Origin: Octopus sinensis | Taxonomy: Eukaryota | Length of the DNA stretch: 26,787 nt | Direction: 5' to 3' | Assembly (NCBI RefSeq): GCF_006345805.1 | Contig: NW_021834715.1 | Coordinates: forward strand, 1 to 26,787 | In this document: one piece after another, positions 941 to 22,790 of the stretch | How the letters are laid out: each line of letters begins with the position of its first letter | How positions within the stretch are numbered: position 1 is the first letter of the stretch | The notes under the pieces: generated by a model | Database searches by the model: none | What the model saw: only the letters and a program-made list of their open reading frames with translations | What the model was told of the DNA's origin: nothing | Position numbers and translations under genes: made by a program

Positions 941-1376
941 TTTTCTTCTTTTATTTGTTTCAGTCATTTGACTGGGGCCATGCTGGAGCACAGCATCTAG
1001 TCGAGCAAATCGACCCCAGGACTTATTCTTTGTAAGCCTAGTACTTATTATATCGGTCTCTCTTGCCGAACCGCTAGGTGACGGGGACGTAAACACACCA
1101 GCATCGGTTGTCAAGCGATGTTGGGCGGGGGGCAGGCAAACACAGACACACAAACATAGACACACACATACATACACACATACACCATACACACACATAC
1201 ACACACATACACACACATACGCACACGTACACACACATAAGCCTAGTACTTATTCTATCGGTCTCTCCTGCCGAACCGCTAAATTACGGCGATGTAAATA
1301 CGCCAGCATCGGTCGTCAAGCAATGCTAGGGGAACAAAAACAGACACACAAACATACACACACACACACACACACA

Positions 1377-1410
<34 letters not shown>

Positions 1411-1595
1411 ACACATATATATATACATATATACGACGGGCTTCTTTCAGTTTCCGTCTACCAAATCCACTAACAAGGCTTTGGTCGGCCCGAGGCTATA
1501 GTAGAAGACACTTGCCCAAGGTGCCACGCAGTGGGACTGAAGCCGGAACCATGTGGCTGGTAAGCAAGCTACTTACAACACAGCCATTCCTGCGT
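941..1595 (-). mobile_element. tRNA-derived CORE-type SINE (family A, octopus-like) with tandemly duplicated 3' segment
   Basis: Reverse complement of the 2141-2563 copy: head with B-box-like GGTTCCGGCTTCAGTCCC, CORE-like GCACCTTGGGCAAGTG, central (TA)/(TG)n, tail ...TGACTGAAACAAA. The block starting TAAGCCTAGTACTTATT occurs twice (about 1032 and 1238). Confidence 0.85.
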
Positions 1596-2140
1596 AAAGA
1601 AATTATGTTACTTTTAACACTAAGGATGCAACTGTAGAGTATATTTTTATGACGTAGGATATTCATTTTTCTACCAAATTTATAGCATGATGTATTCTCG
1701 AGTTAGTGATATCAATAGAAATATGTCTATGGTATATGCCAGTATCAGTTTCGTAAATGTTTTTGGTTTTACCTGAACAAAGATATATTTTAGTTTTTTT
1801 TTCTAATCCTGTTGAATAACTTAAAAGTGTAAAATATCTTCAAATCTATTGGTCAAATTTCAAGTGATCTAAATTTAGTTTGCAGTTAGATAAGTGAGCT
1901 CCACTTGAAGGGCTTTAACTCTGAATTTTAAATTGAGGCTGGTTTTCTTGCATAATTTTTTCAAGTTAGATCATCCTAAATTTATTCAATATCTTGTTGA
2001 GAATGATAAATATTTATGCTAAAAGTCTTGAAGATTCCTATGAAATTTTTTCTGAAACAATATGTCTTGCTTGAAATTGCTGCTAATGCTATTCCATAAT
2101 ATTTGCATCACATATTACAACAAACTGTCGTATTCTTTAT

Positions 2141-2312
2141 AGGCGTAAGAGTGGCTGTGTGGTAAGTAGCTTGCTTACCAACCACATGGTTCCGGGTTCA
2201 GTCCCACTGCGTGTTACCTTGGGCAAGTGTCCTCTACTATAGCCTCGGGCCGACCAAAGCCTTGTGAGTGGATTTGGTAGACGGAAACTGAAAGAAGCCC
2301 GTCGTATAAATG

Positions 2313-2357
<45 letters not shown>

Positions 2358-2563
2358 TTGTATGTCTGTGTTTGTCTCCCCCCAACATCGCTTGACAACC
2401 GATGCTGGTGTGTTTACGTCCCCGTAACTTAGCGGTTCGGCTTAAGAGACCGATAGAATAAGTACTAGGCTTACAAAGAATAAGTCCTGGGGTCGATTTG
2501 CTCGACTGAAGGCGATGCTCCAGCATGTCCACAGTCAAATGACTGAAACAAGTAAAAGAGTAA
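2141..2563 (+). mobile_element. tRNA-derived CORE-type SINE (family A), full-length copy
   Basis: GGCGTAAGAGTGGCTGTGTGGTAAG head, GGTTCCGGGTTCAGTCCC B-box-like motif, ACCTTGGGCAAGTG CORE-like motif, internal (TA)n(TG)n, tail GACTGAAACAAGTAAAAGAGTAA. Homologous copies at 941-1595, 7579-8708 and 24705-24869. Confidence 0.88.
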
Positions 2564-7345: not shown

Positions 7346-7546
7346 AGGCACAAGGCCTGAAATTTTGGAGCAGCGGAGAAGTTGATTACATCGACCCCAG
7401 TGTTATACTGGTATTTACTTTATCGGCCCCGAAAGGATAAACGGTAAAGTTGACCTCGGCAGAATTTGAACTGAGAACGTAGCGACGGGCGAAATAACGT
7501 TAAGCATTTCGTGCAGCATGCTAACGATTCTCCCAGCTCGCCGCCT
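7346..7546 (-). mobile_element. tRNA-derived SINE family B
   Basis: Minus strand GGCGGCGAGCTGGGAGAATCGTTAGC (A-box-like) ... CAGTTCAAATTCTGCC (B-box-like) ... CAAAATTTCAGGCCTTGTGCCT tail; several homologues in the window. Confidence 0.82.
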
Positions 7547-7748
7547 TATCAATGCACTTATAATAACCAGGCTGTGTGGCGTAGGCGTAGGAGTGGATGT
7601 GTGGTAAATAGCCTGCTTACAAACTACATGGTTCCGGGTTCACTCCCACTGCGTGGCACCTTGGGCAAGTGTCTTCTACTCTAGCCTCGGGCCGACCAAA
7701 GCCTTGTGAGTGGATTTGGTAGACGGAAACTGAAAGAAGGCCGTCGTA

Positions 7749-7781
<33 letters not shown>

Positions 7782-7996
7782 TATGTGAAATAGAAAGATG
7801 AATAATCTTGTTGTAGATTAATCAAAAGTTAACCGATACCTTAGTAGCAAAAATCACAGCAGTAAACAGCACGGTTGGAGGTACAACCATCTGGCGTTGC
7901 AACCGTGCGTTGGTGCGGATAATTGAAATTAAAACATTATTGGTGAATTGAGGAAATGGAGCTGAACGCAGATTGAACAGAAATCGTTTTATTTCA

Positions 7997-8076
7997 TTCT
8001 ACACGTGTTTCGAAAGGCACAAATTACCAAAATCCGATTGAATAATGGGACCATATTGTGTCTTTCTCTTCAGGAA
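7997..8076 (-). ncRNA. Type I hammerhead ribozyme (left-arm mirror copy)
   Basis: Reverse complement of the 8241-8319 motif. Confidence 0.75.
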
Positions 8077-8240
8077 GAAAAAAGGAAATCCGTTAGAGAA
8101 ACAAAAACAGAACAGAGGCGGAGCAAAAACCAAATCGAACTATGCTCCTAAGAGCCCATGGGCTCTTAGGAGCATAGTTCGATTTGGTTTTTGCTCCGCC
8201 TCTGTTCTGTTTTTGTTTCTCTAACGGATTTCCTTTTTTC

Positions 8241-8319
8241 TTCCTGAAGAGAAAGACACAATATGGTCCATTATTCAATCGGATTTTGGTAATTTGTGCC
8301 TTTCGAAACACGTGTAGAA
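8241..8319 (+). ncRNA. Type I hammerhead ribozyme with palindromic stem III
   Basis: TTC-CTGAAGA-GAAAG(A)CACAA..about 32 nt..TTGTG(C)CTTTC-GAAA-CACGTG-TA-GAA. Core intact, stem II 10 bp with one mismatch, self-complementary ACACGUGU stem III, predicted GUA cleavage after A8316, short stem I UUC/GAA. Confidence 0.75.
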
Positions 8320-8377
8320 TGAAATAAAACGATTTCTGTTCAATCTGCGTTCAGCTCCATTTCCTCAATTCACCAAT

Positions 8378-8415
<38 letters not shown>

Positions 8416-8424
8416 TATATATAA

Positions 8425-8456
<32 letters not shown>

Positions 8457-8960
8457 ATATATATATATATACATATATATGCATGTGTGTGTATATGTTT
8501 GTGTGTCTGTGTTTGTCCCCGTAACATTGCTTGACAACCGATGCTTGTATGTTTACGTCCCCGTAACTTAGCGGTTCGGCAAGAGAGTCCGATAGAATAA
8601 GTACTAGGCTTACAAAGAATAAGTCCTGGAGTCGATTTGCTCGACTAGAGGCAGTGCTCCAGCATGGCCGCAGTCAAATGACTGAAACAAGTAAAAGAGT
8701 AAAAGAATAAATATTTATACTTTTAATTAAAGATAATGTTGTTTTAATTAAGGAGCCCTTTGTTATTATCCGTGACCACTGGTTTTATTTTTATCAAATG
8801 CATTTTGCAGTTTATCTGATATTACATTATTTAATGCATCCTTTCTGGTTAAAACGTTGAAGTTGAGGAAGACACCGCTACTATTAATGGCAGGTTATGC
8901 GACGCGTACACGTCCTCGCGTTTGGGTTGTTTGGGTGGGGAAGAAGAGAATGGTGACGAT

Positions 8961-9457
8961 TTTATTATTATTATCATTATTATCATTGAGTGAGAGAGCA
9001 GTTCATGCCATCAAAGTGACACTGGGGTAAAATATACGAAGCCCAATATACCCATCATGACTACCCGTCTGATAAAGGTACACCAGGCACATGCATCACA
9101 ACCATATGTGCGCGACATGGTGATCTCATATCAAGATAAACAGCACATGACCTTGCAGGTGGGGCCCAGTTAGAATTTTCTTCATTTTGAGTAGCCCATC
9201 CCGCTCAAACGGTCCCTGAATAAGGGTTGTTTAAGGATGTTGAAAGAACCACCCATGTTTCCAGAGGTGAACTATTCAAACCCCAAAGAATCCCTCTCAA
9301 CACATGGCTATGATGCTCCCCCACTACTTCTGCTCGTGATCAGAGATGCACATATCGTCAGCCACTAAGGGACATGCTCAACTGGTTAAGGTCAAACAAC
9401 TGACAAGCAAATCTGTGGTATTGAGCAGAATATTTGCTGTAGCCCATCTTTTATACC
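8961..9457 (-). mobile_element. Retroposon/SINE-like family D with (AAT)n tail
   Basis: The 3' roughly 135 bp are near-identical to 21644-21777 in opposite orientation, and both end in (AAT)n. No tRNA head recognised. Confidence 0.7.
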
Positions 9458-11638: not shown

Positions 11639-11878
11639 ATGGCTATCAGTGGGGGCATGATCAGGTGAGTACGGTAGATGATGGAAAGCTTCCAACTCCA
11701 ACTCCTGAAATTTTGCCAATGTCATTTTTCGATGTGTGGCCTAGCGTTTTCTCGCAATAAAATAAGAGTGGATCTATTGATTAATCTAGGCTGTTTTTTG
11801 TAAGTTTCTGCATCATTTGGTCCAGTTGGCTGCAGTATACTTCGGCCGTGATTGGTAAGCCAGGGTTAATGAAATCGA
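11639..11878 (-). pseudogene. Mariner transposase catalytic-domain fragment
   Basis: DFINPGLPITAEVYCSQLDQMMQKL / frameshift / QPRLINRSTLILLRENARPHI...HHLPYSPDHAPTDSHF (HDNARPH and YSPDLAPSD motifs, decayed). Confidence 0.85.
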
Positions 11879-11944
11879 CGTTACTACCGTTTTCAACCCC
11901 GGTAGGAGCTTCCTCCAGCTGGTTATCGATGTAAACTGCACCTG

Positions 11945-12095
11945 ATATATATTGCAAGTAGGGGAGCGATCCCCTATCATCTTCTAGCAGATGACGGAAT
12001 CGCCAGACCGTATGGTTTCGGGCTCTTGTGCCCATCCTCATTGGTGAAAACCCGTCCGCTACAGACAGCAGTAATTTGCTCCAGCGATATATATA
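11945..12095 (-). mobile_element. TA-flanked hairpin mini-element M1 carrying a type I hammerhead
   Basis: Termini TATATATTGC / GCGATATATA; internal HHR 12000-12047; extended stem I 11986-12060; perfect hairpin TAGGGGA-GCGA-TCCCCTA at 11959-11976. Confidence 0.55.
12000..12047 (-). ncRNA. Type I hammerhead motif with C3>A substitution
   Basis: TCACCA-ATGAGGA-T-GGGC-acaaga-GCCC-GAAA-CC-atac-GG-TC-TGGCGA. Stems II and III perfect, GUC triplet, stem I 5/6 bp. Confidence 0.7.
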
Positions 12096-13578
12096 CAATA
12101 TTTCATAGAAGTATGTACACCCCTAAAAAATTTCAGTAAAATTACCATTACTCTGATAATACCTAAGGAAATCAAACGAAATATTTACTGAATAAGATAT
12201 TTTATACATGCAAACATTATGCGAATTTGGAACATAAAACAATAAACATTTTCAAAGATATAAACGAAATATTAATTTTCAAACGTAACAAAAATATGTA
12301 CACCCTAAAGGATTATTTGTTATATTCAAAATTTGGTGGAACTGTCCTTGCTTTCAATGACTGCATCAAGTCATCTGGGCATAGAGTTGACTAAATTTCC
12401 GCATATAACCAGTGAAATCGACCTCCATTCATTCTGAATGATGTCTTTCAACTGTGTTACATTGCGGGTTTTTTTCTCCTCAACCTTCCTTTTCAAAACA
12501 CCCCCATCTAGATGTTCTATTGGTTTTAAATCAGTAATACCTTTACCTTTTTATCTGATAAAAACTTAGTCGTCGTCTTTGAATTGTGTTTAGGGTCACT
12601 ATCATGTTGGAACATAGAGTTTCTTCCTAGTTCCTTGATGCTTTTCAACATTGGTTTCTGCAATGTGTCATACTAAAGACTTGAATCCATTGTTCTCTCA
12701 ATAAATGTGAGTCTTTGCACACTAGCCGCACTCATGCATCCCCAAACCATAACTCTTCCGACGCCGTGTTTCACAGTAGGCATAGTACATTTGTCGCTAT
12801 TATCTTCACATGGTCGTCGCCATACTCGTTTAATACCATCTGTCCCAAACAAGTTGATTTTAGTCTCATCAGAAAAAAAAATTTCTAAAACTCCTACTCT
12901 TACACACATAGGTTTCGGCAATAGAAAGACGACTTGATTTATGCCTGGTAGAGAAGAGAGGCTTCCTACGAGGAATGCGTCCATGAAGACCACACTGGTT
13001 CAAACTTTGACGAACTGTTTGGGCGGATACACTCCACTAACACAAGACATTTCTTGGGTTAAAGATGAAGCAGTACGACGCCTGTCATCCATCACGCAAC
13101 GATGGATGTGTGATGAATATCACACGCAGTTAAAATAGAAGGATGACCTAGATGATGTTTATTGCTTAGCTGTCCAGTAGTTTTGTACTTCTGAATTACT
13201 TTGGCAACTGTGTTTACACTAATATGAATTCGTTTGGTAATTAACTGGTATCCTAAACCATTCTTGTGCAAATTAAAAATAATTTTCTTCAAATCTTCAG
13301 ACAATTCTTTCCTTTTGGTGCCATTTTAATCACAATGAAGAAAATTTTCACCACGGTTACCAAATCAGAATTCCTGCAGATGCAATAACAATGACAGGTG
13401 CAAAATGCCAGGGGAAATAATTTATTAGAATTGAAGCAACAATATTTATTGTTTTGTGTTCCATGTTTATATAATGTTTGCATGTATAATAAATTATATT
13501 CGGTAAAAATTTCGTTTGATTTCCTTCGATATTATCATAGTAATGGCAATTTTACTGAAATTTTTAAGGCGTGTACTG
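12096..13578 (-). mobile_element. Tc1-like DNA transposon (IR/DR-type long TIRs, TA target duplication), decayed
   Basis: Left TA|CAATATTTCATAGAAGTATGTACACCCCTAAAAAATTTCAGTAAAATT..., right ...AATTTTACTGAAATTTTTAAGGCGTGTACTG|TA. Inverted similarity extends roughly 150 bp. Inner direct repeat AAATATGTACACCCTA at 12292-12307. Confidence 0.9.
12326..13324 (-). pseudogene. Tc1 DDE transposase pseudogene
   Basis: MAPKGK.LSEDLKKIIFNLHKNGLGYQ (HTH), FSDETKINLFGTDGIKRVWRRP, TVKHGVGRVMVWGCMS, QHDSDPKH, DLKPIEHL, AVIESKDSSTKF*; frameshifts and stops. Confidence 0.92.
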
Positions 13579-13962
13579 TATACCAAAACAGGAAACTGAA
13601 AAAAATTTGGTTATGATTAATTCACCATTACACTTGTTTCATTTGCTAGTACAAGATACAAAATGGTAGATGTAATAGAAACATGATAAGTGTCTATTAG
13701 AAATTCTACAGAGAAACAAATAATGCGAAATTTACATTTGGATGCAGCCCTATTTATAGATAGTAATCAGGTATTCTGTACACAATCAGAGGGGAGAATA
13801 AAGAAGAAAACTAGTAATATAGAAGATATATGTGTGTGTGTGTGTGTATAAACATACAGAGACACATGTATATGCAAATAAGTACAGGTTCATATGCATG
13901 TATGAACACACACATGCATGCATACATACATACATACATACATACATACATACATACATACA

Positions 13963-16329: not shown

Positions 16330-16929
16330 CTGAATGATGATGTTATGTGTGTGTGTATGTGTATGAAAATTAACATCTTTTTTATTAATTACATTTGGAT
16401 GGAACGTATCTTTAATTTTCATATATACACTGTATATTTTTTTACACGGTTTTATTTTGCATGGTAGTCTCTGGAACCTATTCCCTGTACAAAAAGAGAA
16501 TTGAGTGTATATTGGCCCTTTCATCTATTTACTTGGACCTGCATTATGAAGAAGATACTTACGAGTAATTGCCCCTATCCGGTTCATGAAACGGACTTGA
16601 ACCATCTGAGTGTTGACACGCTTCGTCAAGGGAGCTAACTTTAAAAGCTTATCAAAGTTATTTCCCTTGAATAACATCTGTGGCATTTTTATGAATATAA
16701 TGAGGAGTCTACTATGATTGTTTAATTATTGAAGTTTTGTTCTTAGTGGAGTGAAGGAGGGTGGCAGCGGTGGAGGCGGTGGCGGTGGTGGAGGCTGCAG
16801 TGGTGGTGTTAGCGGCGATGGTGGTGGTAGTGGTAGTGGTGGTGGACATGGTGATTGTGACAGTAACGGCAGAGGTGGTAGCATTGGTAGCAGTTTGACA
16901 CTAGTAGTGTATGTCGCTTTTGTTGCCGT

Positions 16930-17338
16930 TATCAACGTGGAATAAGCCCACAGGTCCAAAATGGATGGACACTGTACAAGTGCGTGCAGAACGGTTTCGT
17001 CGCTCTGACCGTATCTCGGGCAAGTCGGTCCATTGTGTCTCGAACCGTGACTGTAGAGCTTATACCGAACAGGTAATGCTTCTCGATAGCCCACTATTTT
17101 TTCCCGGTTAATTTTTGCTCCCGTTACCGCTTCGTATCCTTTTAGTGTCTCGCCGACCAGGTCGATGTGCTTGTTGCTCGACACTATGATGGTGACGTCG
17201 TCCGCGTATCCAGACACGCTTCTCCCGCGTCCCAGCTCTCGTGGGATGCCCTTCAGCATCGCCAGTTTCCGCAGCAGTGGCTCAAGAGTCAATACATACA
17301 GAAGCGATGAGAGGGGGCATCCTTGACGAGCCGAACGC
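16930..17338 (-). pseudogene. Tx1/L1-like LINE fragment: RT core joined directly to C-terminal zinc knuckle
   Basis: RQGCPLSSLLYVLTLEPLL, YADDVT, TGAKINREK, then CPRYGQSDETVLHALVQCP. Confidence 0.9.
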
Positions 17339-17455
<117 letters not shown>

Positions 17456-17577
17456 TGATATTTTCTGTATCAACAGAAATGATTGGCGGCTTTGTATGGT
17501 GACTTCAACAATTAAAGATGTGGATTTACTTTATCCATATTTTTTGTTATATATATAATGTGGGTCTTGTTTGATAT

Positions 17578-17609
<32 letters not shown>

Positions 17610-17757
17610 CAAAGAGCAATAAAGATTCAAGTAATTTAAATGAATTTACTTGAATATGGTACCTAACTTAGATGCACCAAAAAAAACCATACTGATTTAA
17701 CAATACAGTAATGTGGGGTGATTATAAGCGAGAAAGAAGCAACAAGAATGGATAGGT

Positions 17758-17847
17758 TTTTAGTACGATCGTTTCATACAGGACAGGTTTTATTAAAAGT
17801 TGCAAAGATTACAGCATATAAACGAGTCCCGTACTCATCAGCTAAAA
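17758..17847 (-). ncRNA. Type I hammerhead ribozyme (left arm; bulge-free stem II)
   Basis: TTTTAG-CTGATGA-GTACGGGAC..41 nt..GTCCTGTAT-GAAA-CGATCG-TA-CTAAAA. 6-bp stem I, 9-bp stem II including GU pairs, palindromic ACGAUCGU stem III, GUA triplet. Confidence 0.82.
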
Positions 17848-18292
17848 TACATGTGAGTTCTCTAGACATCCTAGTGTTTGAGGCTATACTCATGAAGTAT
17901 GTAGATATTAATTAACATAAACAGATTTCTAAAGTTCATTAAAGTTCTTTAAAGATGATGTACAGTCTTATCACAGAATTTTAAAAAAGTTTTGATAGCA
18001 TCACAGAGAAGGTGACCTAATCCATATGAATTTCCATAGATATGATGAGGGATTATATACTCACAGAAGACAAATTTATCCATTGTTAATTACAACGAGG
18101 TGGGTCTCAATTCCTGCTTATTAGCATTACAGAGAGGGTGCTATCAAAACTTTTTTAAAATTCTGTGATAAGACTGTACATCATCTTTAAAGAACTTTAA
18201 TGAACTTTAGAAATCTGTTTATGTTAATTAATTATCTACATACTTCATGAGTATAGCCTCAAACACTAGGATGTCTAGAGAACTCACATGTA

Positions 18293-18383
18293 TTTTAGCT
18301 GATGAGTACGGGACTCGTTTATATGCTGTAATCTTTGCAACTTTTAATAAAACCTGTCCTTGTATGAAACGATCGTACTAAAA
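18293..18383 (+). ncRNA. Type I hammerhead ribozyme (right arm)
   Basis: Same as the left-arm copy with one extra U bulge in stem II; predicted cleavage after A18377. Confidence 0.8.
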
Positions 18384-18414
18384 ACCTATCCATTCTTGTT
18401 GCTTCTTTCTCGCG

Positions 18415-18469
<55 letters not shown>

Positions 18470-18545
18470 ATATATATATATTAGACAAAAGCAGATAACA
18501 AATGCTGTGAGGAGTTTTCAGGACATTTATAAGGAAAGAGATATA

Positions 18546-18593: not shown

Positions 18594-18628
18594 GATGTGA
18601 GAGAAGTAAATGTTTGAGTTCGAAAAAA

Positions 18629-18930
18629 GGAATTATTATGGAAAAGAAGGAGATAGGGAAAATAGAAGGAAATAAGAGAATGAAAGTAGAAATAACATAT
18701 AAAATATTGTGGTTGCAGTTCCATTACTTTTTTACCACTTCTATACACCATTTTACTAATGGTGTATAGAAGTGGTAAGAAAGTTTCCTGTACATGGTAT
18801 ATAAATTTTGACCGTCGTTCTTGTTCAGTCATTTCAAAGTATGGAGCCGTGGATCCTGTGTTGCCCATTCGAATATATAGATCATTTTATATAAACTGTT
18901 AGGTGCAATGTGATACCATAAATGAGAAAT
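18629..18930. repeat. Direct repeat copy 1 (302 bp)
   Basis: Highly similar to 19740-20019; carries a 22-bp net gain from a local inverted duplication. Confidence 0.92.
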
Positions 18931-19174: not shown

Positions 19175-19739
19175 TATGTATTTACCATAAAAATTTATGG
19201 ATGATTTAGCGAAATGCTAATGCATAAAACAAAATTTAATAATGCATAGAAAATACTTGCCATTGCTACGTAATGAAATAACAGTCTTTGCAAGGGGCTG
19301 CTTTCAATTAAACTTAAGAAAGCTACGGCAACATCTCAGCTAGTATCATGGATGGTGAATGGTGATTTTTCAGGTATTTCATTTTTCACAAAAACTGTGT
19401 AAAATACAATAAATGGACCTTCTGAAGCATAAGAAGCTGTCCCAAGAACCTGTGGTATTTGAATTACGTTAACACATTCAAAAATCGGTGAGTCAAAGGG
19501 ATGCCGAAGATCCAAGGAAAGTTCCTTGGAAATGTCTGATGAGGAAGGTACCTAACTCTTTTTCATGTAGGGCCCACAAGTAACATTGTCCGACTATGTA
19601 AAATATCTGTAGGGGGCCCTGGTTGTCTCATCGGAGTTTCATTGCGTATATCTTGTTTTAAACTACAACGTTGAGTCTACAGTCAAAATATTCAATTCGT
19701 CCTTAGTCGAAAGACACCTGTTGTTATGTCCTGTTATTA

Positions 19740-20019
19740 GGAATTATTATGGAAAAGGAGGAGATAGGGAAAATAGAAGGAAATCAGAGAATGAAAGTAG
19801 AAATAACATATAAAATATTGTGGTTGCAGTTCCATTATTCGAGTAAAATGGCGTATAGAAGTGGTAAAAAAGTTTCCTGTACATGGTATATAAATTTCGA
19901 CCGTCGTTCTTGTTCAGTCATTTCAAAGTATGGAGCCGATGGTCCTGTGTTGCTCATTCGAATATATAGATCATTTTATATAAACTGTTAGGTGCAATGT
20001 GATACCATAAATGAGAAAT
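19740..20019. repeat. Direct repeat copy 2 (280 bp)
   Basis: Highly similar to 18629-18930. Confidence 0.92.
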
Positions 20020-20333: not shown

Positions 20334-20354
20334 TTTTTGTTTATGTTAACACAA

Positions 20355-20564
20355 AGGCGGTGAGCTGGCACAACCGTTAGCACACTAGGCAAAGTGTGTA
20401 GCGACATTTCGCCCGTCTCTACGTTCTTAGTTCAAATTCCGCCGAAGTCCACTTTGTCTTTTATCCTTTCCATATCGATAGAATAAGCACCAGTCGAGCA
20501 CTGGGCTCGATGCAGTCGACTTACCCACACCCCACAAAATTGCTGGCCTTGTGCCAAAATTTGG
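20355..20564 (+). mobile_element. SINE family B
   Basis: GGCGGTGAGCTGGCACAACCGTTAGC...TAGTTCAAATTCCGCC...GGCCTTGTGCCAAAATTTG. Confidence 0.8.
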
Positions 20565-21280: not shown

Positions 21281-21577
21281 ATCCTTTCTACTATAGCCAT
21301 AAGGCCTGAAATTTGAGGTATATTCGATTACAATTCAACTGTTACTAATTTCATCGATTCCGAAAGGATGAAAGGCAAAGTCGACCTCGGCGGAATTTGA
21401 ACTCAGAACGTAAAGACGGACCAGATGCTGCTATGCATGTTGCCCGGTGTGCTAACGATTCTACCAGCTCGCAGCCTTCATAATCCTTTATACTATAGGC
21501 ACAAGGCCTGAAATTTTGGAGGAGGGGGCCAGTTGATTAGATCGACCCCAGTACACAACTAGTACTTATCGCCGCCT
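21281..21577 (-). mobile_element. Two adjacent internally deleted SINE family B copies (21281-21477; 21481-21577)
   Basis: Both carry the TTTCAGGCCTT tail; the first retains the B-box region, the second joins the 3' part to the 5' tip TCGCCGCC. Confidence 0.72.
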
Positions 21578-21643
21578 TAATAATAATACTAATAACTATA
21601 ACAACAACAAAAACAACAATAATAATAATATCTGATATTAGAG

Positions 21644-21817
21644 CACCATGTCACGCACATATGGTTGTGATGCATGTGCCTGGTGTACCCTTATCAGACG
21701 GGTAGATGATGGGTATACTGGGCTTCGTATATTTTACCACAGTGTCACTTTGATGGCATGCTCTGCTCTCTCACTCAATAATAATAATAATAATAATAAT
21801 ATAATAATAATAATAAT
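21644..21817 (+). mobile_element. 5'-truncated family D copy with (AAT)n tail
   Basis: Matches the 3' end of 8961-9457. Confidence 0.75.
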
Positions 21818-21839: not shown

Positions 21840-22480
21840 AGTTCGTCAACTTCTTGCTAATCTTTGCTCCTGTCATCGCTTCGTACTCCCTTGAGACAGT
21901 ACCGACCACTTCGATTTCCGAGATGTCCGCCGCTTGTCGTCGCATAAGTCGACACGAACCTTCCGCATCCTCGTTCACGCGGGATGCTCCTGGAAACAGC
22001 CAACTTCCTTAGCAATGACTTGAGAGCCAGCACATACAAAGGGAGCGAGAGTAGGCATCCTTGAAGGACCGAACGTTCGATGGTAAACGATTCCGATAGG
22101 TGGCCACTTACTTTGATCGCCGGAAAGATATCACTGTACATTGCAGCGATCCAGCCTCTGAAAATAGGACCGAACCCACCCGCCGTGAGGACAGTCTTTC
22201 AGTATTGATGATCAACACTATGAAAAGCTTTTGATTGATCCAAATTGACCAGAGCCCCACCCATGCCACGTTCCTTCCCTATCTTCTTTATGATGTAGCG
22301 CGCGAGGTGAAAGTTGTTGTGGATAGCGCATGTCTCTGCGTCACCGACGAGCTTATCGACTACAAGCGCCAACCTCTTCGCTAACACCTAAAATCTTATA
22401 ACCTGCATTCGTCAGAGTTATGGGCCTAAAATTGTCTATTTGGTCCTCCTTGTTCATGTCCTTTCTCAGCAGCACCACCG
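21840..22480 (-). pseudogene. Tx1/L1-like LINE reverse transcriptase fragment
   Basis: NFRPITLTNAGYKI, LAKRLALVVDKL, LVNLDQSKAFHSVDHQY, RSVLQGCLLSLPLYVLALKSLLRKL, YEAMTGAKI; frameshifted; same family as 16930-17338. Confidence 0.88.
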
Positions 22481-22562: not shown

Positions 22563-22790
22563 TTCTTTACTACCCACAAGGGGCTAAATACAGAGGGGAC
22601 AAACAAGGACAGACAAACGGATTAAGTCGATTATATCGACTCCAGTACGTAACTGGTACTTATTTAATCGACCCGAAAGGATGAATGGCAAAGTCGACCT
22701 CGGTGGAATTTGAACTCAGAATGTAGCGGTAGGCGAAATACCGCTAAGCATTTCGTCCGGCGTGCTAACGTTTCTGCCAGCTCGCCGCCT
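22563..22790 (-). mobile_element. SINE family B variant with a different 3' tail
   Basis: Head and box motifs shared with the other B copies; tail ...TTTAGCCCCTTGTGGGTAGTAAAGAA. Confidence 0.8.

What the first reader, a model, noticed from the sequence alone, without database searches (positions are those of the whole stretch)
7782..8386. 457-bp spacerless palindrome with two outward-reading hammerheads, inserted into a SINE's (TA)n
Seen: arms 7930-8158 and 8159-8386 are identical except for one indel and have no loop. Each holds an intact HHR. A 148-bp one-sided extension contains a 9-bp hairpin (GCACGGTTG 7869-7877 / CAACCGTGC 7900-7908). The unit splits a family A SINE whose halves are colinear on either side. 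Inference: a young, non-coding mobile insertion younger than the SINE and targeted to (TA)n, best explained as an inverted PLE terminal repeat formed by fold-back during reverse transcription. Long spacerless palindromes are generally unstable, so persistence suggests recency.
Basis: partly seen in the sequence, partly recalled or inferred. Interest (0 to 1): 0.85.

Follow-up and report, generated by a model that had tools for sequence, protein, structure and literature searches.

The report
Inverted hammerhead retroelement pair in (TA)n
A young, non-coding retroelement fragment carrying a hammerhead ribozyme sits head-to-head with a copy of itself inside the (TA)n tract of a SINE, which is the published insertion footprint of Penelope-like retroelements, so it is a clean example of a known kind.

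Summary
Arms 7930-8158 and 8159-8386 form a 457-bp palindrome with no spacer. The arms differ by one G in a G-run. A 148-bp extension lies on one side only. The insertion sits in the internal (TA)n of a SINE whose two halves are colinear with intact copies. Each arm has a complete type I hammerhead core that reads outward, with an 8-nt palindromic helix III. The Rfam hammerhead score is below threshold.

I found a second, unrelated element in the window (17574-18481) with the same layout. It has a (TA)n tract on both sides, a 111-bp one-sided extension with a 10-bp hairpin, and two ~99% identical inverted arms. Each arm carries an outward-reading hammerhead. Here the arms are separated by a 138-bp spacer.

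A hammerhead descriptor finds exactly these four motifs in the window, against 0.002 expected by chance.

These features are described for Penelope-like elements (PLEs): head-to-head inverted terminal repeats with a palindromic junction, a one-sided 3' "tail", hammerheads in the repeats, and AT-rich or (TA)n targets. Two points remain open. Fold-back cannot be told apart from priming on both target strands. No parent element or other copy could be searched for, because no eukaryotic DNA database was available.

Verdict: new member of a known kind, moderate to low interest.

The parts
7560..7746 (+). 5' half of the host SINE (tRNA-like head and body), up to its internal microsatellite
   Evidence: 92-93% identical to copies at 2140-2303 (+) and 1591-1435 (-)
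7747..7781 (.). (TA)17 tract left of the insertion (the target microsatellite)
   Evidence: Tandem Repeats Finder; sequence
7782..7929 (-). 148-bp one-sided extension. It is the 3' continuation of the minus-strand copy and is tail-like. It holds the 9-bp stem-loop 7869-7877/7900-7908, which lies +92 to +131 nt downstream of the hammerhead cleavage site.
   Evidence: Absent from the right arm and from the SINE consensus; hairpin statistics; distances
7930..8158 (-). Left palindrome arm (229 nt). It is the minus-strand copy, with its 5' end at the centre.
7994..8079 (-). Type I hammerhead motif of the left arm (C3 at 8073, A17 at 8000, predicted cleavage between 8000 and 7999)
   Evidence: Descriptor hits; mirror image of the Rfam match
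8159..8386 (+). Right palindrome arm (228 nt). It is the plus-strand copy, with its 5' end at the centre, and it ends 70 nt after the cleavage site.
8238..8322 (+). Type I hammerhead motif of the right arm. Helix I is UUCUUC/GAAUGA. The core is CUGAAGA. Helix II is a long 9-bp stem (GAAAGACAC/GUGCCUUUC) with a 36-nt cap. Then come GAAA and helix III, which is A-U and C-G closing an ACGU loop (ACACGUGU is an 8-nt palindrome). Predicted cleavage is after A8316.
   Evidence: Rfam RF00163 at 14.9 bits, full-length model match; descriptor; manual pairing table and dimer cofold; pair counts
8387..8480 (.). (TA)n tract right of the insertion, continuing into the SINE's (TG)n
8481..8700 (+). 3' half of the host SINE
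   Evidence: About 90% identical to 2343-2561 (+) and 1169-947 (-)
17574..18481 (.). Second, unrelated element with the same architecture. Its parts are: (AT)18 17574-17609; 111-bp one-sided extension 17610-17720 with a 10-bp hairpin 17625-17634/17646-17655; left arm 17721-18000 (-) with a hammerhead (C3 17841, A17 17764); 138-bp spacer 18001-18138; right arm 18139-18420 (+) with a hammerhead 18293-18383 (C3 18299, A17 18377); (TA)n 18421-18481.
   Evidence: blastn self-comparison; sequence and inverted repeats; arm alignment with 1 substitution and 2 one-base indels; Rfam RF00163 at 22 bits, E=0.002; descriptor; hairpin in 14/2000 shuffles

Best explanation
The unit is an insertion of a hammerhead-bearing, ORF-less retroelement fragment of the Penelope-like (PLE) type. 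It is either a pLTR-only piece of a PLE or a PLE-dependent non-autonomous, retrozyme-like element.

Inferred mechanism. A PLE reverse transcriptase/GIY-YIG endonuclease cut the SINE's (TA)n tract. cDNA synthesis started inside the 3' region of the element RNA at one of two alternative sites. One site lies beyond a stem-loop and gives the long copy, which ends 218 nt after the hammerhead cleavage site. The other lies before the stem-loop and gives the short copy, which ends 70 nt after that site. The two copies ended up head-to-head, with 5' ends at the centre and 3' ends against (TA)n. This could happen in two ways. Both target strands may have primed a cDNA, and the two cDNAs were then joined at their 3' ends. 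Alternatively, one cDNA reached the end of its template and then copied itself back. In this locus both copies stop at the same nucleotide, around a short natural palindrome (CATG), so the product is a perfect palindrome without a spacer.

What is shown: the anatomy, the hammerhead cores, the target, the youth of the arms, and the recurrence in a second element.

What is inferred: the enzyme, the RNA intermediate and the order of steps.

The hammerhead has only a 2-bp helix III. It is predicted to be a poor self-cleaver on its own and to need a second copy in the same RNA (dimer). This inverted locus does not provide that. The locus is therefore most likely an inert by-product of integration, not a working unit.
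For: (1) Hammerheads are real features and not chance. A descriptor (CUGANGA, helix II of 4 bp or more, GAAA, helix III, UH, helix I) finds exactly four motifs in 26.8 kb, two per inverted structure, all reading outward. The expectation is 0.002 per randomised window. Rfam's type I model aligns end to end at 14.9 and 22 bits.

(2) In a trimmed alignment with the mussel and axolotl retrozyme hammerheads (taken from the constructs table in the supplement of PMC7229834, which marks an HHR self-cleavage site in each retrozyme sequence), 95.8% of cells pair, against 33-52% when the partners are slid. Eight of 12 pairs change on both sides.

(3) Helix III plus its loop is an 8-nt palindrome in both elements (ACACGTGT, ACGATCGT). 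Cofolding two copies predicts the 8-bp intermolecular helix III. This is the dimer design described for metazoan and PLE hammerheads (PMC4209133).

(4) The head-to-head orientation, palindromic junction, one-sided 3' extension and arm length (228 nt, against 181-218-bp pLTRs) match Adineta vaga Penelope copies (PMC3846280) and the general PLE scheme (PMC8557442, Fig. 2 legend).

(5) The purified PLE protein cleaves and extends both target strands. It prefers AT-rich DNA and starts reverse transcription at two internal sites in a stem-loop about 85-92 nt downstream of the hammerhead cut; the tail is the sequence between those sites (PMC11167929). Here, stem-loops lie +92 to +131 and +109 to +139 nt from the cut in the two elements, inside the one-sided extensions.

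(6) Two of two elements lie inside (TA)n tracts, which cover about 3% of the window. A (TA)n bias is reported for Naiad PLEs, and a microsatellite bias was hypothesised for Neptune PLEs (PMC8557442).

(7) The two elements share no sequence outside the hammerhead core. The architecture therefore recurs across families, as expected if it comes from the integration machinery.
Against: No PLE ORF (RT plus GIY-YIG) lies in or next to the unit. No other copy of the arm is in the window. No relative was found in the collections I could search, namely JGI metagenomes, IMG/VR and 5.8 billion predicted proteins. None of these is a eukaryotic genome database, so PLE parentage rests on architecture alone.

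The extension is 148 bp (111 bp in the second element), against the 30-40-bp tail reported for PLEs.

The hammerheads score below Rfam's gathering threshold and have an unusually long helix II insert (about 50 nt). The monomeric hammerhead fold is not the minimum-energy fold (-13.5 vs -18.0 kcal/mol).

The PLE clade explicitly tied to (TA)n (Naiad) lacks canonical hammerheads (PMC8557442).

I recognise the host only from memory as octopus-like; no tool confirmed this.
Confidence: 0.7

Rival explanations
1. A simple, single-copy insertion (extension + one arm + more 5' sequence) was later converted into a palindrome at the DNA level. The routes would be replication template switching or fold-back repair of a break, possibly provoked by the cruciform-prone (TA)n tract.
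For: The right arm ends in a 2-nt overlap with (TA)n (TTTTA|TATATA). The centre is a short natural palindrome, CCCATGGG, which could nucleate fold-back. (TA)n tracts are known fragile, hairpin-forming sequences (general knowledge).
Against: The same head-to-head polarity recurs in an unrelated second element. Both 3' ends abut (TA)n and there is a one-sided extension. That points to the integration process and not to two independent repair accidents. PLE literature reports this arrangement as the commonest form (PMC3846280).
Confidence: 0.1
2. The 457-bp palindrome is a foldback or MITE-type DNA transposon with 228-bp terminal inverted repeats and a TA target-site duplication. The 148-bp piece is an unrelated earlier insertion.
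For: The palindrome can be parsed as TA + AAACATT...AATGTTT + TA, which fits a Tc1/mariner-like TA duplication. Mariner-like transposase remnants exist in the window.
Against: Each arm carries a complete hammerhead core, which is a retroelement hallmark. The second element has no matching dinucleotide at its arm ends (GTG|ATTATAAG ... TATAAT|ATAT). This model leaves unexplained two coincident hairpin-bearing extensions of 111-148 bp lying between (TA)n and the left arm. There is no spacer and no transposase-binding-like termini.
Confidence: 0.05
3. The inversion is an assembly or long-read artefact (a chimeric fold-back read, or mis-joining through self-complementary (TA)n).
For: PLE-type inverted or tandem structures are known to cause assembly problems (PMC8557442, PMC3846280). 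The only arm difference is a homopolymer-length difference, which is typical of long-read error. Both flanks are self-complementary (TA)n.
Against: A fold-back chimeric read would also invert the extension and the left SINE half. Instead the right arm stops at a defined point and continues into the correctly oriented 3' SINE half. A second, asymmetric inverted structure with a unique 138-bp spacer exists 10 kb away. That one cannot be produced by a simple read-through artefact.
Confidence: 0.07
4. The element is a hammerhead-bearing non-autonomous retroposon (non-LTR retrozyme or SINE-like) mobilised by a LINE and not by a PLE. The inversion would come from L1-style twin priming.
For: The unit size (377 nt) and GC content (38%) fit metazoan non-LTR retrozymes of 150-450 bp with GC below 50% (PMC7229834). 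LINE RT fragments are present in the window. Twin priming also gives head-to-head junctions.
Against: Twin priming joins two different, contiguous parts of one RNA; it does not produce two copies of the same segment. There is no poly(A) or LINE-like 3' tail. There are no tandem head-to-tail units. Recent work places animal retrozymes as PLE derivatives in any case (bioRxiv 10.64898/2026.07.22.740005).
Confidence: 0.08

Closest known systems
Penelope-like element insertions with inverted pLTRs (for example Pen2a_Av and Pen2_Av of Adineta vaga, and Penelope of Drosophila virilis)
   Same: Both have a head-to-head inverted terminal repeat with a palindrome at the junction. Repeat length is about 180-220 bp. 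An optional extension (tail) lies at the 3' end of only one of the inverted repeats. A hammerhead sits in each repeat. Targets are AT-rich or microsatellite DNA, and 5' truncation is frequent (PMC3846280, PMC8557442, PMC4209133).
   Different: There is no RT/GIY-YIG ORF between or beside the repeats. The extension is 148 bp, not about 31-40 bp. The junction is a perfect palindrome of the full repeat with no spacer, not a 15-38-bp overlap. Homology to a PLE could not be tested.
Dual minimal hammerheads on opposite strands in Schistosoma mansoni (truncated Cercyon PLEs)
   Same: Two hammerheads lie 100-700 bp apart on opposite strands without an ORF. Here the cleavage sites are 316 bp apart. Helix II is large and helix I is short and poorly defined (PMC4209133).
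   Different: Here helix III is present (2 bp plus a 4-nt palindromic loop), not the minimal form. No nucleotide is inserted between A9 and G10.1. Helix II carries a cap of about 36-40 nt.
Metazoan non-LTR retrozymes (mussel Mg353, axolotl Ax353/Ax330, coral Amil224)
   Same: Both have a type I hammerhead with a short helix III closed by a palindromic loop. The 12-nt box GAAACACGTGTA is identical to axolotl Ax353. The unit is about 377 nt, GC content is low, and there is no coding capacity (PMC7229834).
   Different: Retrozymes are head-to-tail tandem arrays that yield circRNAs. This locus is an inverted pair with no direct repeat, so a transcript holds one sense ribozyme sequestered in a 228-bp duplex.
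PAc (Poseidon of Anolis carolinensis) in vitro integration
   Same: The target is AT-rich. Both target strands are cleaved and extended. Reverse transcription starts at two internal sites in a stem-loop about 90 nt downstream of the hammerhead cut, and the tail is the sequence between them (PMC11167929). Here stem-loops lie at +92 to +131 and +109 to +139, inside the one-sided extensions.
   Different: That is an in vitro result for a vertebrate element with an ORF. Here the difference between the two copy ends is 111-148 nt, and the short copies end before the stem-loop, not within it.

Membership tests
Penelope-like element (PLE) insertion | Single ORF with a PLE-type reverse transcriptase and a GIY-YIG endonuclease | tested here: not met
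   No stop-free stretch with protein-like content lies in 6.6-9.4 kb. The unit's longest frames are 46-61 codons. The locus is therefore at most a pLTR-only or non-autonomous derivative.
Penelope-like element (PLE) insertion | Hammerhead ribozyme motif in the terminal repeat (pLTR) | tested here: met
   A complete core is present in each arm.
Penelope-like element (PLE) insertion | Inverted 5'-truncated copy joined head-to-head, with a palindrome at the junction | tested here: met
   The 5' ends of both hammerhead-sense copies meet at 8158|8159 with 0 nt between the arms.
Penelope-like element (PLE) insertion | Optional 30-40-bp tail at the 3' end of only one repeat | tested here: inconclusive
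   A one-sided 3' extension is present, but it is 148 bp long (111 bp in the second element).
Penelope-like element (PLE) insertion | Insertion into AT-rich or microsatellite DNA | tested here: met
   Both elements lie inside (TA)n tracts, and (TA)n covers about 3% of the window.
Penelope-like element (PLE) insertion | Sequence homology of the repeat to the pLTR of an ORF-bearing PLE in the same genome | not testable with these tools
   No eukaryotic genome or Repbase/Dfam library was available. Scans of metagenome, viral and protein collections were empty.
Non-LTR retrozyme | Head-to-tail tandem repeats of the hammerhead unit | tested here: not met
   There is no direct repeat of the unit in the locus or the window.
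Non-LTR retrozyme | Non-coding unit of 150-450 bp with GC content below 50%, carrying a type I hammerhead | tested here: met
   The unit is 377 nt with 38% GC. The hammerhead evidence is as above.
Non-LTR retrozyme | Expression as a small circular RNA | not testable with these tools
   No transcriptome data were available.
Hammerhead ribozyme type I (Rfam RF00163) | Conserved core CUGANGA / GAAA / UH with helices I-III in type I topology | tested here: met
Hammerhead ribozyme type I (Rfam RF00163) | Score at or above Rfam's gathering threshold (34 bits) | tested here: not met
   Scores are 14.9 bits for this element and 22 bits for the second one. Both are penalised by 50-54-nt inserts in helix II.
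Hammerhead ribozyme type I (Rfam RF00163) | Self-cleavage at the predicted site | not testable with these tools
   This needs in vitro transcription of monomer and dimer constructs.
Foldback / MITE DNA transposon | Terminal inverted repeats at the ends of the whole insertion, plus a fixed target-site duplication | tested here: not met
   The ends of the whole insertion (7782... and ...8386) are not inverted repeats. A TA duplication is possible only if the 148-bp piece is excluded, and it is absent from the second element.

The most novel reading that the evidence does not exclude
The two loci might represent an undescribed group of ORF-less hammerhead elements in this (probably cephalopod) genome. 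Such elements would integrate habitually as inverted dimers into (TA)n. They would have long (110-150 nt) stem-loop-bearing 3' tails in place of the canonical 30-40-bp PLE tail. They would also be in vivo footprints of reverse transcription primed from both target strands at two alternative start sites. In this reading, the perfect palindrome marks two cDNAs that ran to the same RNA 5' end and were joined end to end.
Probability: 0.2. Interest if true: 0.55.

Novelty: new member of a known kind. Interest (0 to 1): 0.35.

Why it matters
How PLEs integrate is still largely unknown. The origin of their inverted and tandem repeats and of the tail is an explicitly open question (PMC8557442, PMC11167929). 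Young, unmutated insertions whose pre-insertion site can be reconstructed are useful natural records of that process. Here the reconstruction is possible because the target is a SINE with intact sister copies.

This window offers two such records side by side. In one, both copies stop at the same nucleotide. In the other, the stops are 138 nt apart. Both have a long one-sided 3' extension containing a stem-loop at about the distance from the hammerhead where a vertebrate PLE starts reverse transcription in vitro.

There are also practical points. Structures like these are hard to assemble, are easily annotated as MITEs or miRNA-like hairpins, and would give a 228-bp perfect dsRNA if transcribed. 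None of this changes the classification: it is a textbook PLE-type footprint and not a new kind of element.

Tried and rejected
- Rfam at gathering threshold on the whole window gave nothing.
- In E-value mode on 7700-8500 the palindrome only produced spurious matches to long miRNA and snoRNA hairpin models. I ignored these as trivial consequences of a perfect hairpin.
- I looked for other copies in several ways. blastn of the unit against the window found none.
- Exact look-ups of four window ORFs (three from the arms or spanning the centre, one from elsewhere in the window) in the public gene-position index found none.
- A 20-mer and a gapped hammerhead pattern in JGI metagenome contigs and IMG/VR gave 0 hits.
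- A phmmer-type search with all stop-free translations of the unit concatenated gave no hit.
- These collections hold essentially no cephalopod DNA, so the empty results do not show that the element is single-copy.
I listed stop-free segments instead.
- To identify the host, a text search for the SINE sequence in papers found nothing. An RT fragment from 16726-17340 matched only unnamed ENA metagenome contigs.
- I considered a Helitron (AT target, subterminal hairpin) and rejected it. There are no TC...CTRR ends, and the hairpin is 87 nt from the end.
- I considered a coding relic. The sense frame has a single stop in 105 codons, but there is no in-frame start, the composition is low-complexity, and there are no homologues. 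I rejected it as probable chance.
Full report
**1. The observation**

The region was read directly. The repeat finder reports two abutting perfect inverted repeats: 7930-8048/8268-8386 (119 nt) and 8048-8158/8159-8269 (111 nt, 0 nt between the arms). A global alignment of the 229-nt left arm with the reverse complement of the 228-nt right arm shows one single-base gap and no substitution. The gap is a GGG run versus a GG run near 8046-8048. Symmetry ends exactly at 7930 and 8386. The centre reads CCCA|TGGG. A perfect stem of that length occurs in 1.6% of dinucleotide shuffles of the extension.

The flanks are the two halves of a SINE with an internal (TA)n(TG)n. When joined, they align colinearly with intact copies at about 2118-2561 (+) and 1620-947 (-). 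Nothing else in the window resembles the arm or the extension. The description is confirmed in every structural detail.

**2. The hammerheads**

Rfam finds nothing in the window at gathering thresholds. Searched in E-value mode, the palindrome itself produces meaningless matches to long hairpin models. On the 113 nt around the candidate, the type I hammerhead model RF00163 aligns end to end (model 1-45) at 8238-8322 (+). It scores 14.9 bits (gathering 34, E=0.4), with a 50-nt insertion in helix II.

By hand and by script, every core position is present. Helix I is UUCUUC/GAAUGA with one mismatch. C3-A9 is CUGAAGA (8244-8250). G10.1-C11.1 closes a 9-bp helix II (one A·C mismatch) with a 36-nt imperfect cap. 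Next come G12A13A14, then A15.1-U16.1 and C15.2-G16.2 closing an ACGU loop, and the cleavage triplet GUA with A17 at 8316. The left arm holds the mirror image on the minus strand (C3 8073, A17 8000). The single-base difference between the arms lies in the cap of helix II, outside the core.

A descriptor requiring these elements finds only these motifs in both strands of the window, and none in 300 Markov-1 randomisations. So the motif is not chance. However, 'intact' can be claimed only for the sequence core. The monomeric hammerhead fold (-13.5 kcal/mol) is not the minimum-energy fold (-18.0). Two copies are predicted to pair through the 8-nt palindrome ACACGUGU into an intermolecular helix III (-47.9 kcal/mol against 2 x -18.0). 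That is the dimer-dependent design described for metazoan and PLE hammerheads (PMC4209133).

**3. A second instance in the same window**

A self-comparison of the window revealed another young inverted repeat that the finding did not mention. Reading it gives the same plan:

- (AT)18, 17574-17609
- a 111-bp one-sided extension, 17610-17720
- left arm, 17721-18000
- a unique 138-bp spacer, 18001-18138
- right arm, 18139-18420
- (TA)n, 18421-18481

The arms differ by one substitution and two single-base indels in 282 nt. Each arm carries an outward-reading hammerhead. On the + strand helix I is UUUUAG/CUAAAA (6 bp). The core is CUGAUGA with C3 at 18299. Helix II opens with a G·U pair. The 3' box is GAAAC-GAUC-GUA, with A17 at 18377. 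ACGATCGT is again an 8-nt palindrome. RF00163 scores 22 bits there (E=0.002 in a 121-nt search).

Relaxing my descriptor to allow G·U at 10.1-11.1 gives exactly four hits in the window, two per structure. All four have a palindromic helix III. The expectation is 0.002 per randomised window. The second extension also has a stem-loop (10 bp, 17625-17634/17646-17655; 0.7% of shuffles). Measured from the predicted cleavage sites, the stem-loops lie at +92 to +131 (first element) and +109 to +139 (second). The short copies end at +70 and +43, and the long copies at +218 and +154.

The two elements share no sequence similarity outside the hammerhead core (local score 25 against 21.5±2.6 for shuffles). 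They are different families built to one plan.

I made a hand-trimmed 39-column alignment of the two hammerheads with two retrozyme hammerheads, mussel Mg353 and axolotl Ax353. Their sequences come from the constructs table in the supplement of PMC7229834, which marks an HHR self-cleavage site in each. In this alignment 95.8% of cells pair, against 33-52% when the 3' partners are slid, and 8 of 12 pairs change on both sides. Because the alignment was trimmed to the structure, it leans towards that structure.

**4. What it is**

The literature describes this anatomy for Penelope-like elements.

- In Adineta vaga, Penelope copies carry an inverted pLTR next to the direct one. The pLTRs are 181-218 bp. 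[quoted passage not shown] Palindromes occur at the inverted junction, and the arrangement is most often head-to-head. The authors interpret this as self-priming, and they note AT-rich targets and solo pLTR structures (PMC3846280).
- The general scheme is 5' truncation, an adjacent inverted 5'-truncated copy, a 30-40-bp tail at one end, and hammerheads in pLTRs. It is restated for all EN+ clades. A (TA)n insertion bias is reported for Naiads, and a microsatellite bias was hypothesised for Neptune. The authors warn that such structures disturb assemblies (PMC8557442).
- Hammerheads with a large helix II, a short helix I and a small palindromic helix III are the PLE signature. Dual motifs 100-700 bp apart on opposite strands, without an ORF, were already seen in Schistosoma (PMC4209133). 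Here the two cleavage sites are 316 bp apart.
- The purified Anolis PLE protein cleaves AT-rich DNA and extends both target strands. It starts reverse transcription at two internal sites in a stem-loop roughly 85-92 nt downstream of the hammerhead cut. The tail is the sequence between these sites (PMC11167929).
- Animal non-LTR retrozymes are ORF-less hammerhead repeats of 150-450 bp with low GC content (PMC7229834). They have recently been argued to be non-autonomous derivatives of PLE pLTRs (bioRxiv 10.64898/2026.07.22.740005).

The unit here is 377 nt with 38% GC and has no coding capacity. No PLE-like ORF lies within several kb.

**5. Most likely mechanism**

Shown:

- Two copies of the same RNA-sense segment lie head-to-head, with their 3' ends against (TA)n.
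- One copy is 148 nt longer at its 3' end.
- Both stop at the same 5' nucleotide.
- There are no substitutions between the copies.
- An unrelated element repeats the pattern but with unequal 5' ends.

Inferred: a PLE RT/EN nicked the (TA)n tract. Reverse transcription began either beyond or before the 3' stem-loop of the element RNA. The inverted pair then arose in one of two ways. In (a), cDNAs primed on both target strands were joined at their 3' ends by an end-to-end template jump or by annealing of a terminal CATG. In (b), one cDNA copied itself back after reaching the end of its template.

Route (a) accounts naturally for the two different 3' ends and for the second element, whose two copies end 138 nt apart. 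At that element's junction I found no complementarity that could support self-priming (and inspection). Route (b) is the published proposal and accounts naturally for the exact palindrome. The sequence cannot decide between them. Knowing the 5' end of the family's master copy would.

The locus itself is probably inert. A transcript would contain one sense hammerhead locked in a 228-bp perfect duplex, and there is no second sense copy for dimer formation.

**6. Age**

Zero substitutions in 228 aligned positions puts the 95% upper bound on arm-to-arm divergence near 1.3%. If the host is an octopus and the published calibration holds (Jukes-Cantor 0.09 ≈ 25 My, PMC13282606), the palindrome would be younger than roughly 2 My, provided there has been no arm-to-arm gene conversion. 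This is inference. I recognise the host only from memory of the SINE and of the microsatellite-rich composition, and no tool confirmed it. The same paper lists 31 recently active PLE families in Octopus vulgaris, so an active source is plausible. The host SINE copies differ from one another by 7-10%, so they are much older.

**7. Rivals**

- A DNA-level inverted duplication after a simple insertion is possible. It would have had to occur twice, with the same polarity, in two unrelated hammerhead elements.
- A foldback or MITE element with a TA duplication can be parsed for the first element only if the extension is ignored. It fails for the second element.
- An assembly artefact is unlikely. 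The right arm leads into the correctly oriented 3' half of the SINE, and the second structure has a unique spacer. Only raw reads can exclude an artefact.
- LINE-mediated twin priming would join different parts of one RNA, not two copies of the same part.

**8. Comparison and novelty**

By how it works and how it is built, this is a PLE-type insertion. As to membership, the structural criteria are met: a hammerhead in the repeat, a head-to-head inverted copy with a palindromic junction, a one-sided 3' extension and an AT-microsatellite target. The ORF criterion is not met at this locus. The tail length is out of range. Homology to a PLE could not be tested. I therefore file it as a new member of a known kind: a pLTR-only or non-autonomous, retrozyme-like derivative.

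Three points are slightly unusual and worth a genome-wide look. First, the junction is an exact, full-length palindrome without a spacer. Second, the one-sided extensions are long (111-148 nt) and contain a stem-loop. Third, two such elements occur within 10 kb, both in (TA)n. The TA tract around the first insertion totals about 130 bp, against about 14 bp in the sister SINE copies. It is therefore open whether the tract attracted the insertion or grew with it.

**9. Limits**

No eukaryotic genome, Repbase or Dfam library, read set or transcriptome was available. All searches of the accessible collections were empty, which was expected given what those collections contain.

Noticed in passing
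window 17574-18481: A second young inverted repeat has the same architecture as the finding. It has (TA)n on both sides, a 111-bp one-sided extension with a 10-bp hairpin, and 280/282-nt arms that are ~99% identical. Each arm has an outward-reading type I hammerhead (RF00163 at 22 bits). The arms are separated by a unique 138-bp spacer. It has no sequence similarity to the first element outside the ribozyme core.
   Followed up: yes
window 7747-7781 and 8387-8480 versus 2304-2322 and about 1415-1435: The TA tract of the split SINE totals about 130 bp, while the sister SINE copies have only about 12-14 bp of TA before their (TG)n. Either an expanded tract attracted the insertion, or TA repeats were added during integration.
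   Followed up: partly
window 8158|8159 and 18000 / 18139: In both elements the inverted arms begin, in ribozyme-sense orientation, with TG (TGGGCTC..., TGCTATC...). A junction without a spacer therefore reads CA|TG. This could be chance (about 1 in 16) or a preferred stop or jump site.
   Followed up: no
window 17995-18012 and 18122-18138: A 17-nt direct repeat, TAGCAT(C/T)ACAGAGA(A/G)GG (15/17 identical), sits at both borders of the 138-bp spacer of the second element. It may mark the point of template switching.
   Followed up: partly
window 7825-8139 (- strand): In the ribozyme-sense frame, 105 codons (unit nt 20-334) contain a single stop. That stop is the TAG overlapping the predicted hammerhead cleavage triplet. 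There is no in-frame start and no homologue. A rough estimate puts the chance at about 0.04 over six frames.
   Followed up: partly
window 7347-7547, 20354-20555 (-), 21337-21478, 22624-22790: Another dispersed repeat family (75-82% identity among copies) lies directly upstream of the split SINE. It is probably a second SINE-like family.
   Followed up: no
window 947-1620 (-): This SINE copy contains an internal partial duplication of its own 3' half (1238-1366 and 947-1169 both match 8484-8700), separated by (TG)n-rich sequence.
   Followed up: no
window 16726-17469 (-) and 21857-22387 (-): These are LINE reverse-transcriptase fragments (Pfam RVT_1 and zf-RVT on the first). The open frame of the first runs on into a perfect (AGAT)29 microsatellite and a proline-rich tail. 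ENA metagenome contigs carry RT fragments that are 74-81% identical.
   Followed up: partly
window 11781-13580 (-): Mariner/Tc1-like transposase remnants are present (weak Pfam Transposase_1 hit), with an internal inverted duplication (13441-13576 versus 12250-12115, 86%).
   Followed up: no
window 18628-18930 and 19739-20019; 8959-9138 and 21629-21805: Two further repeat pairs were seen: a direct pair at 89% identity and an inverted pair at 92%. Their nature is unknown.
   Followed up: no
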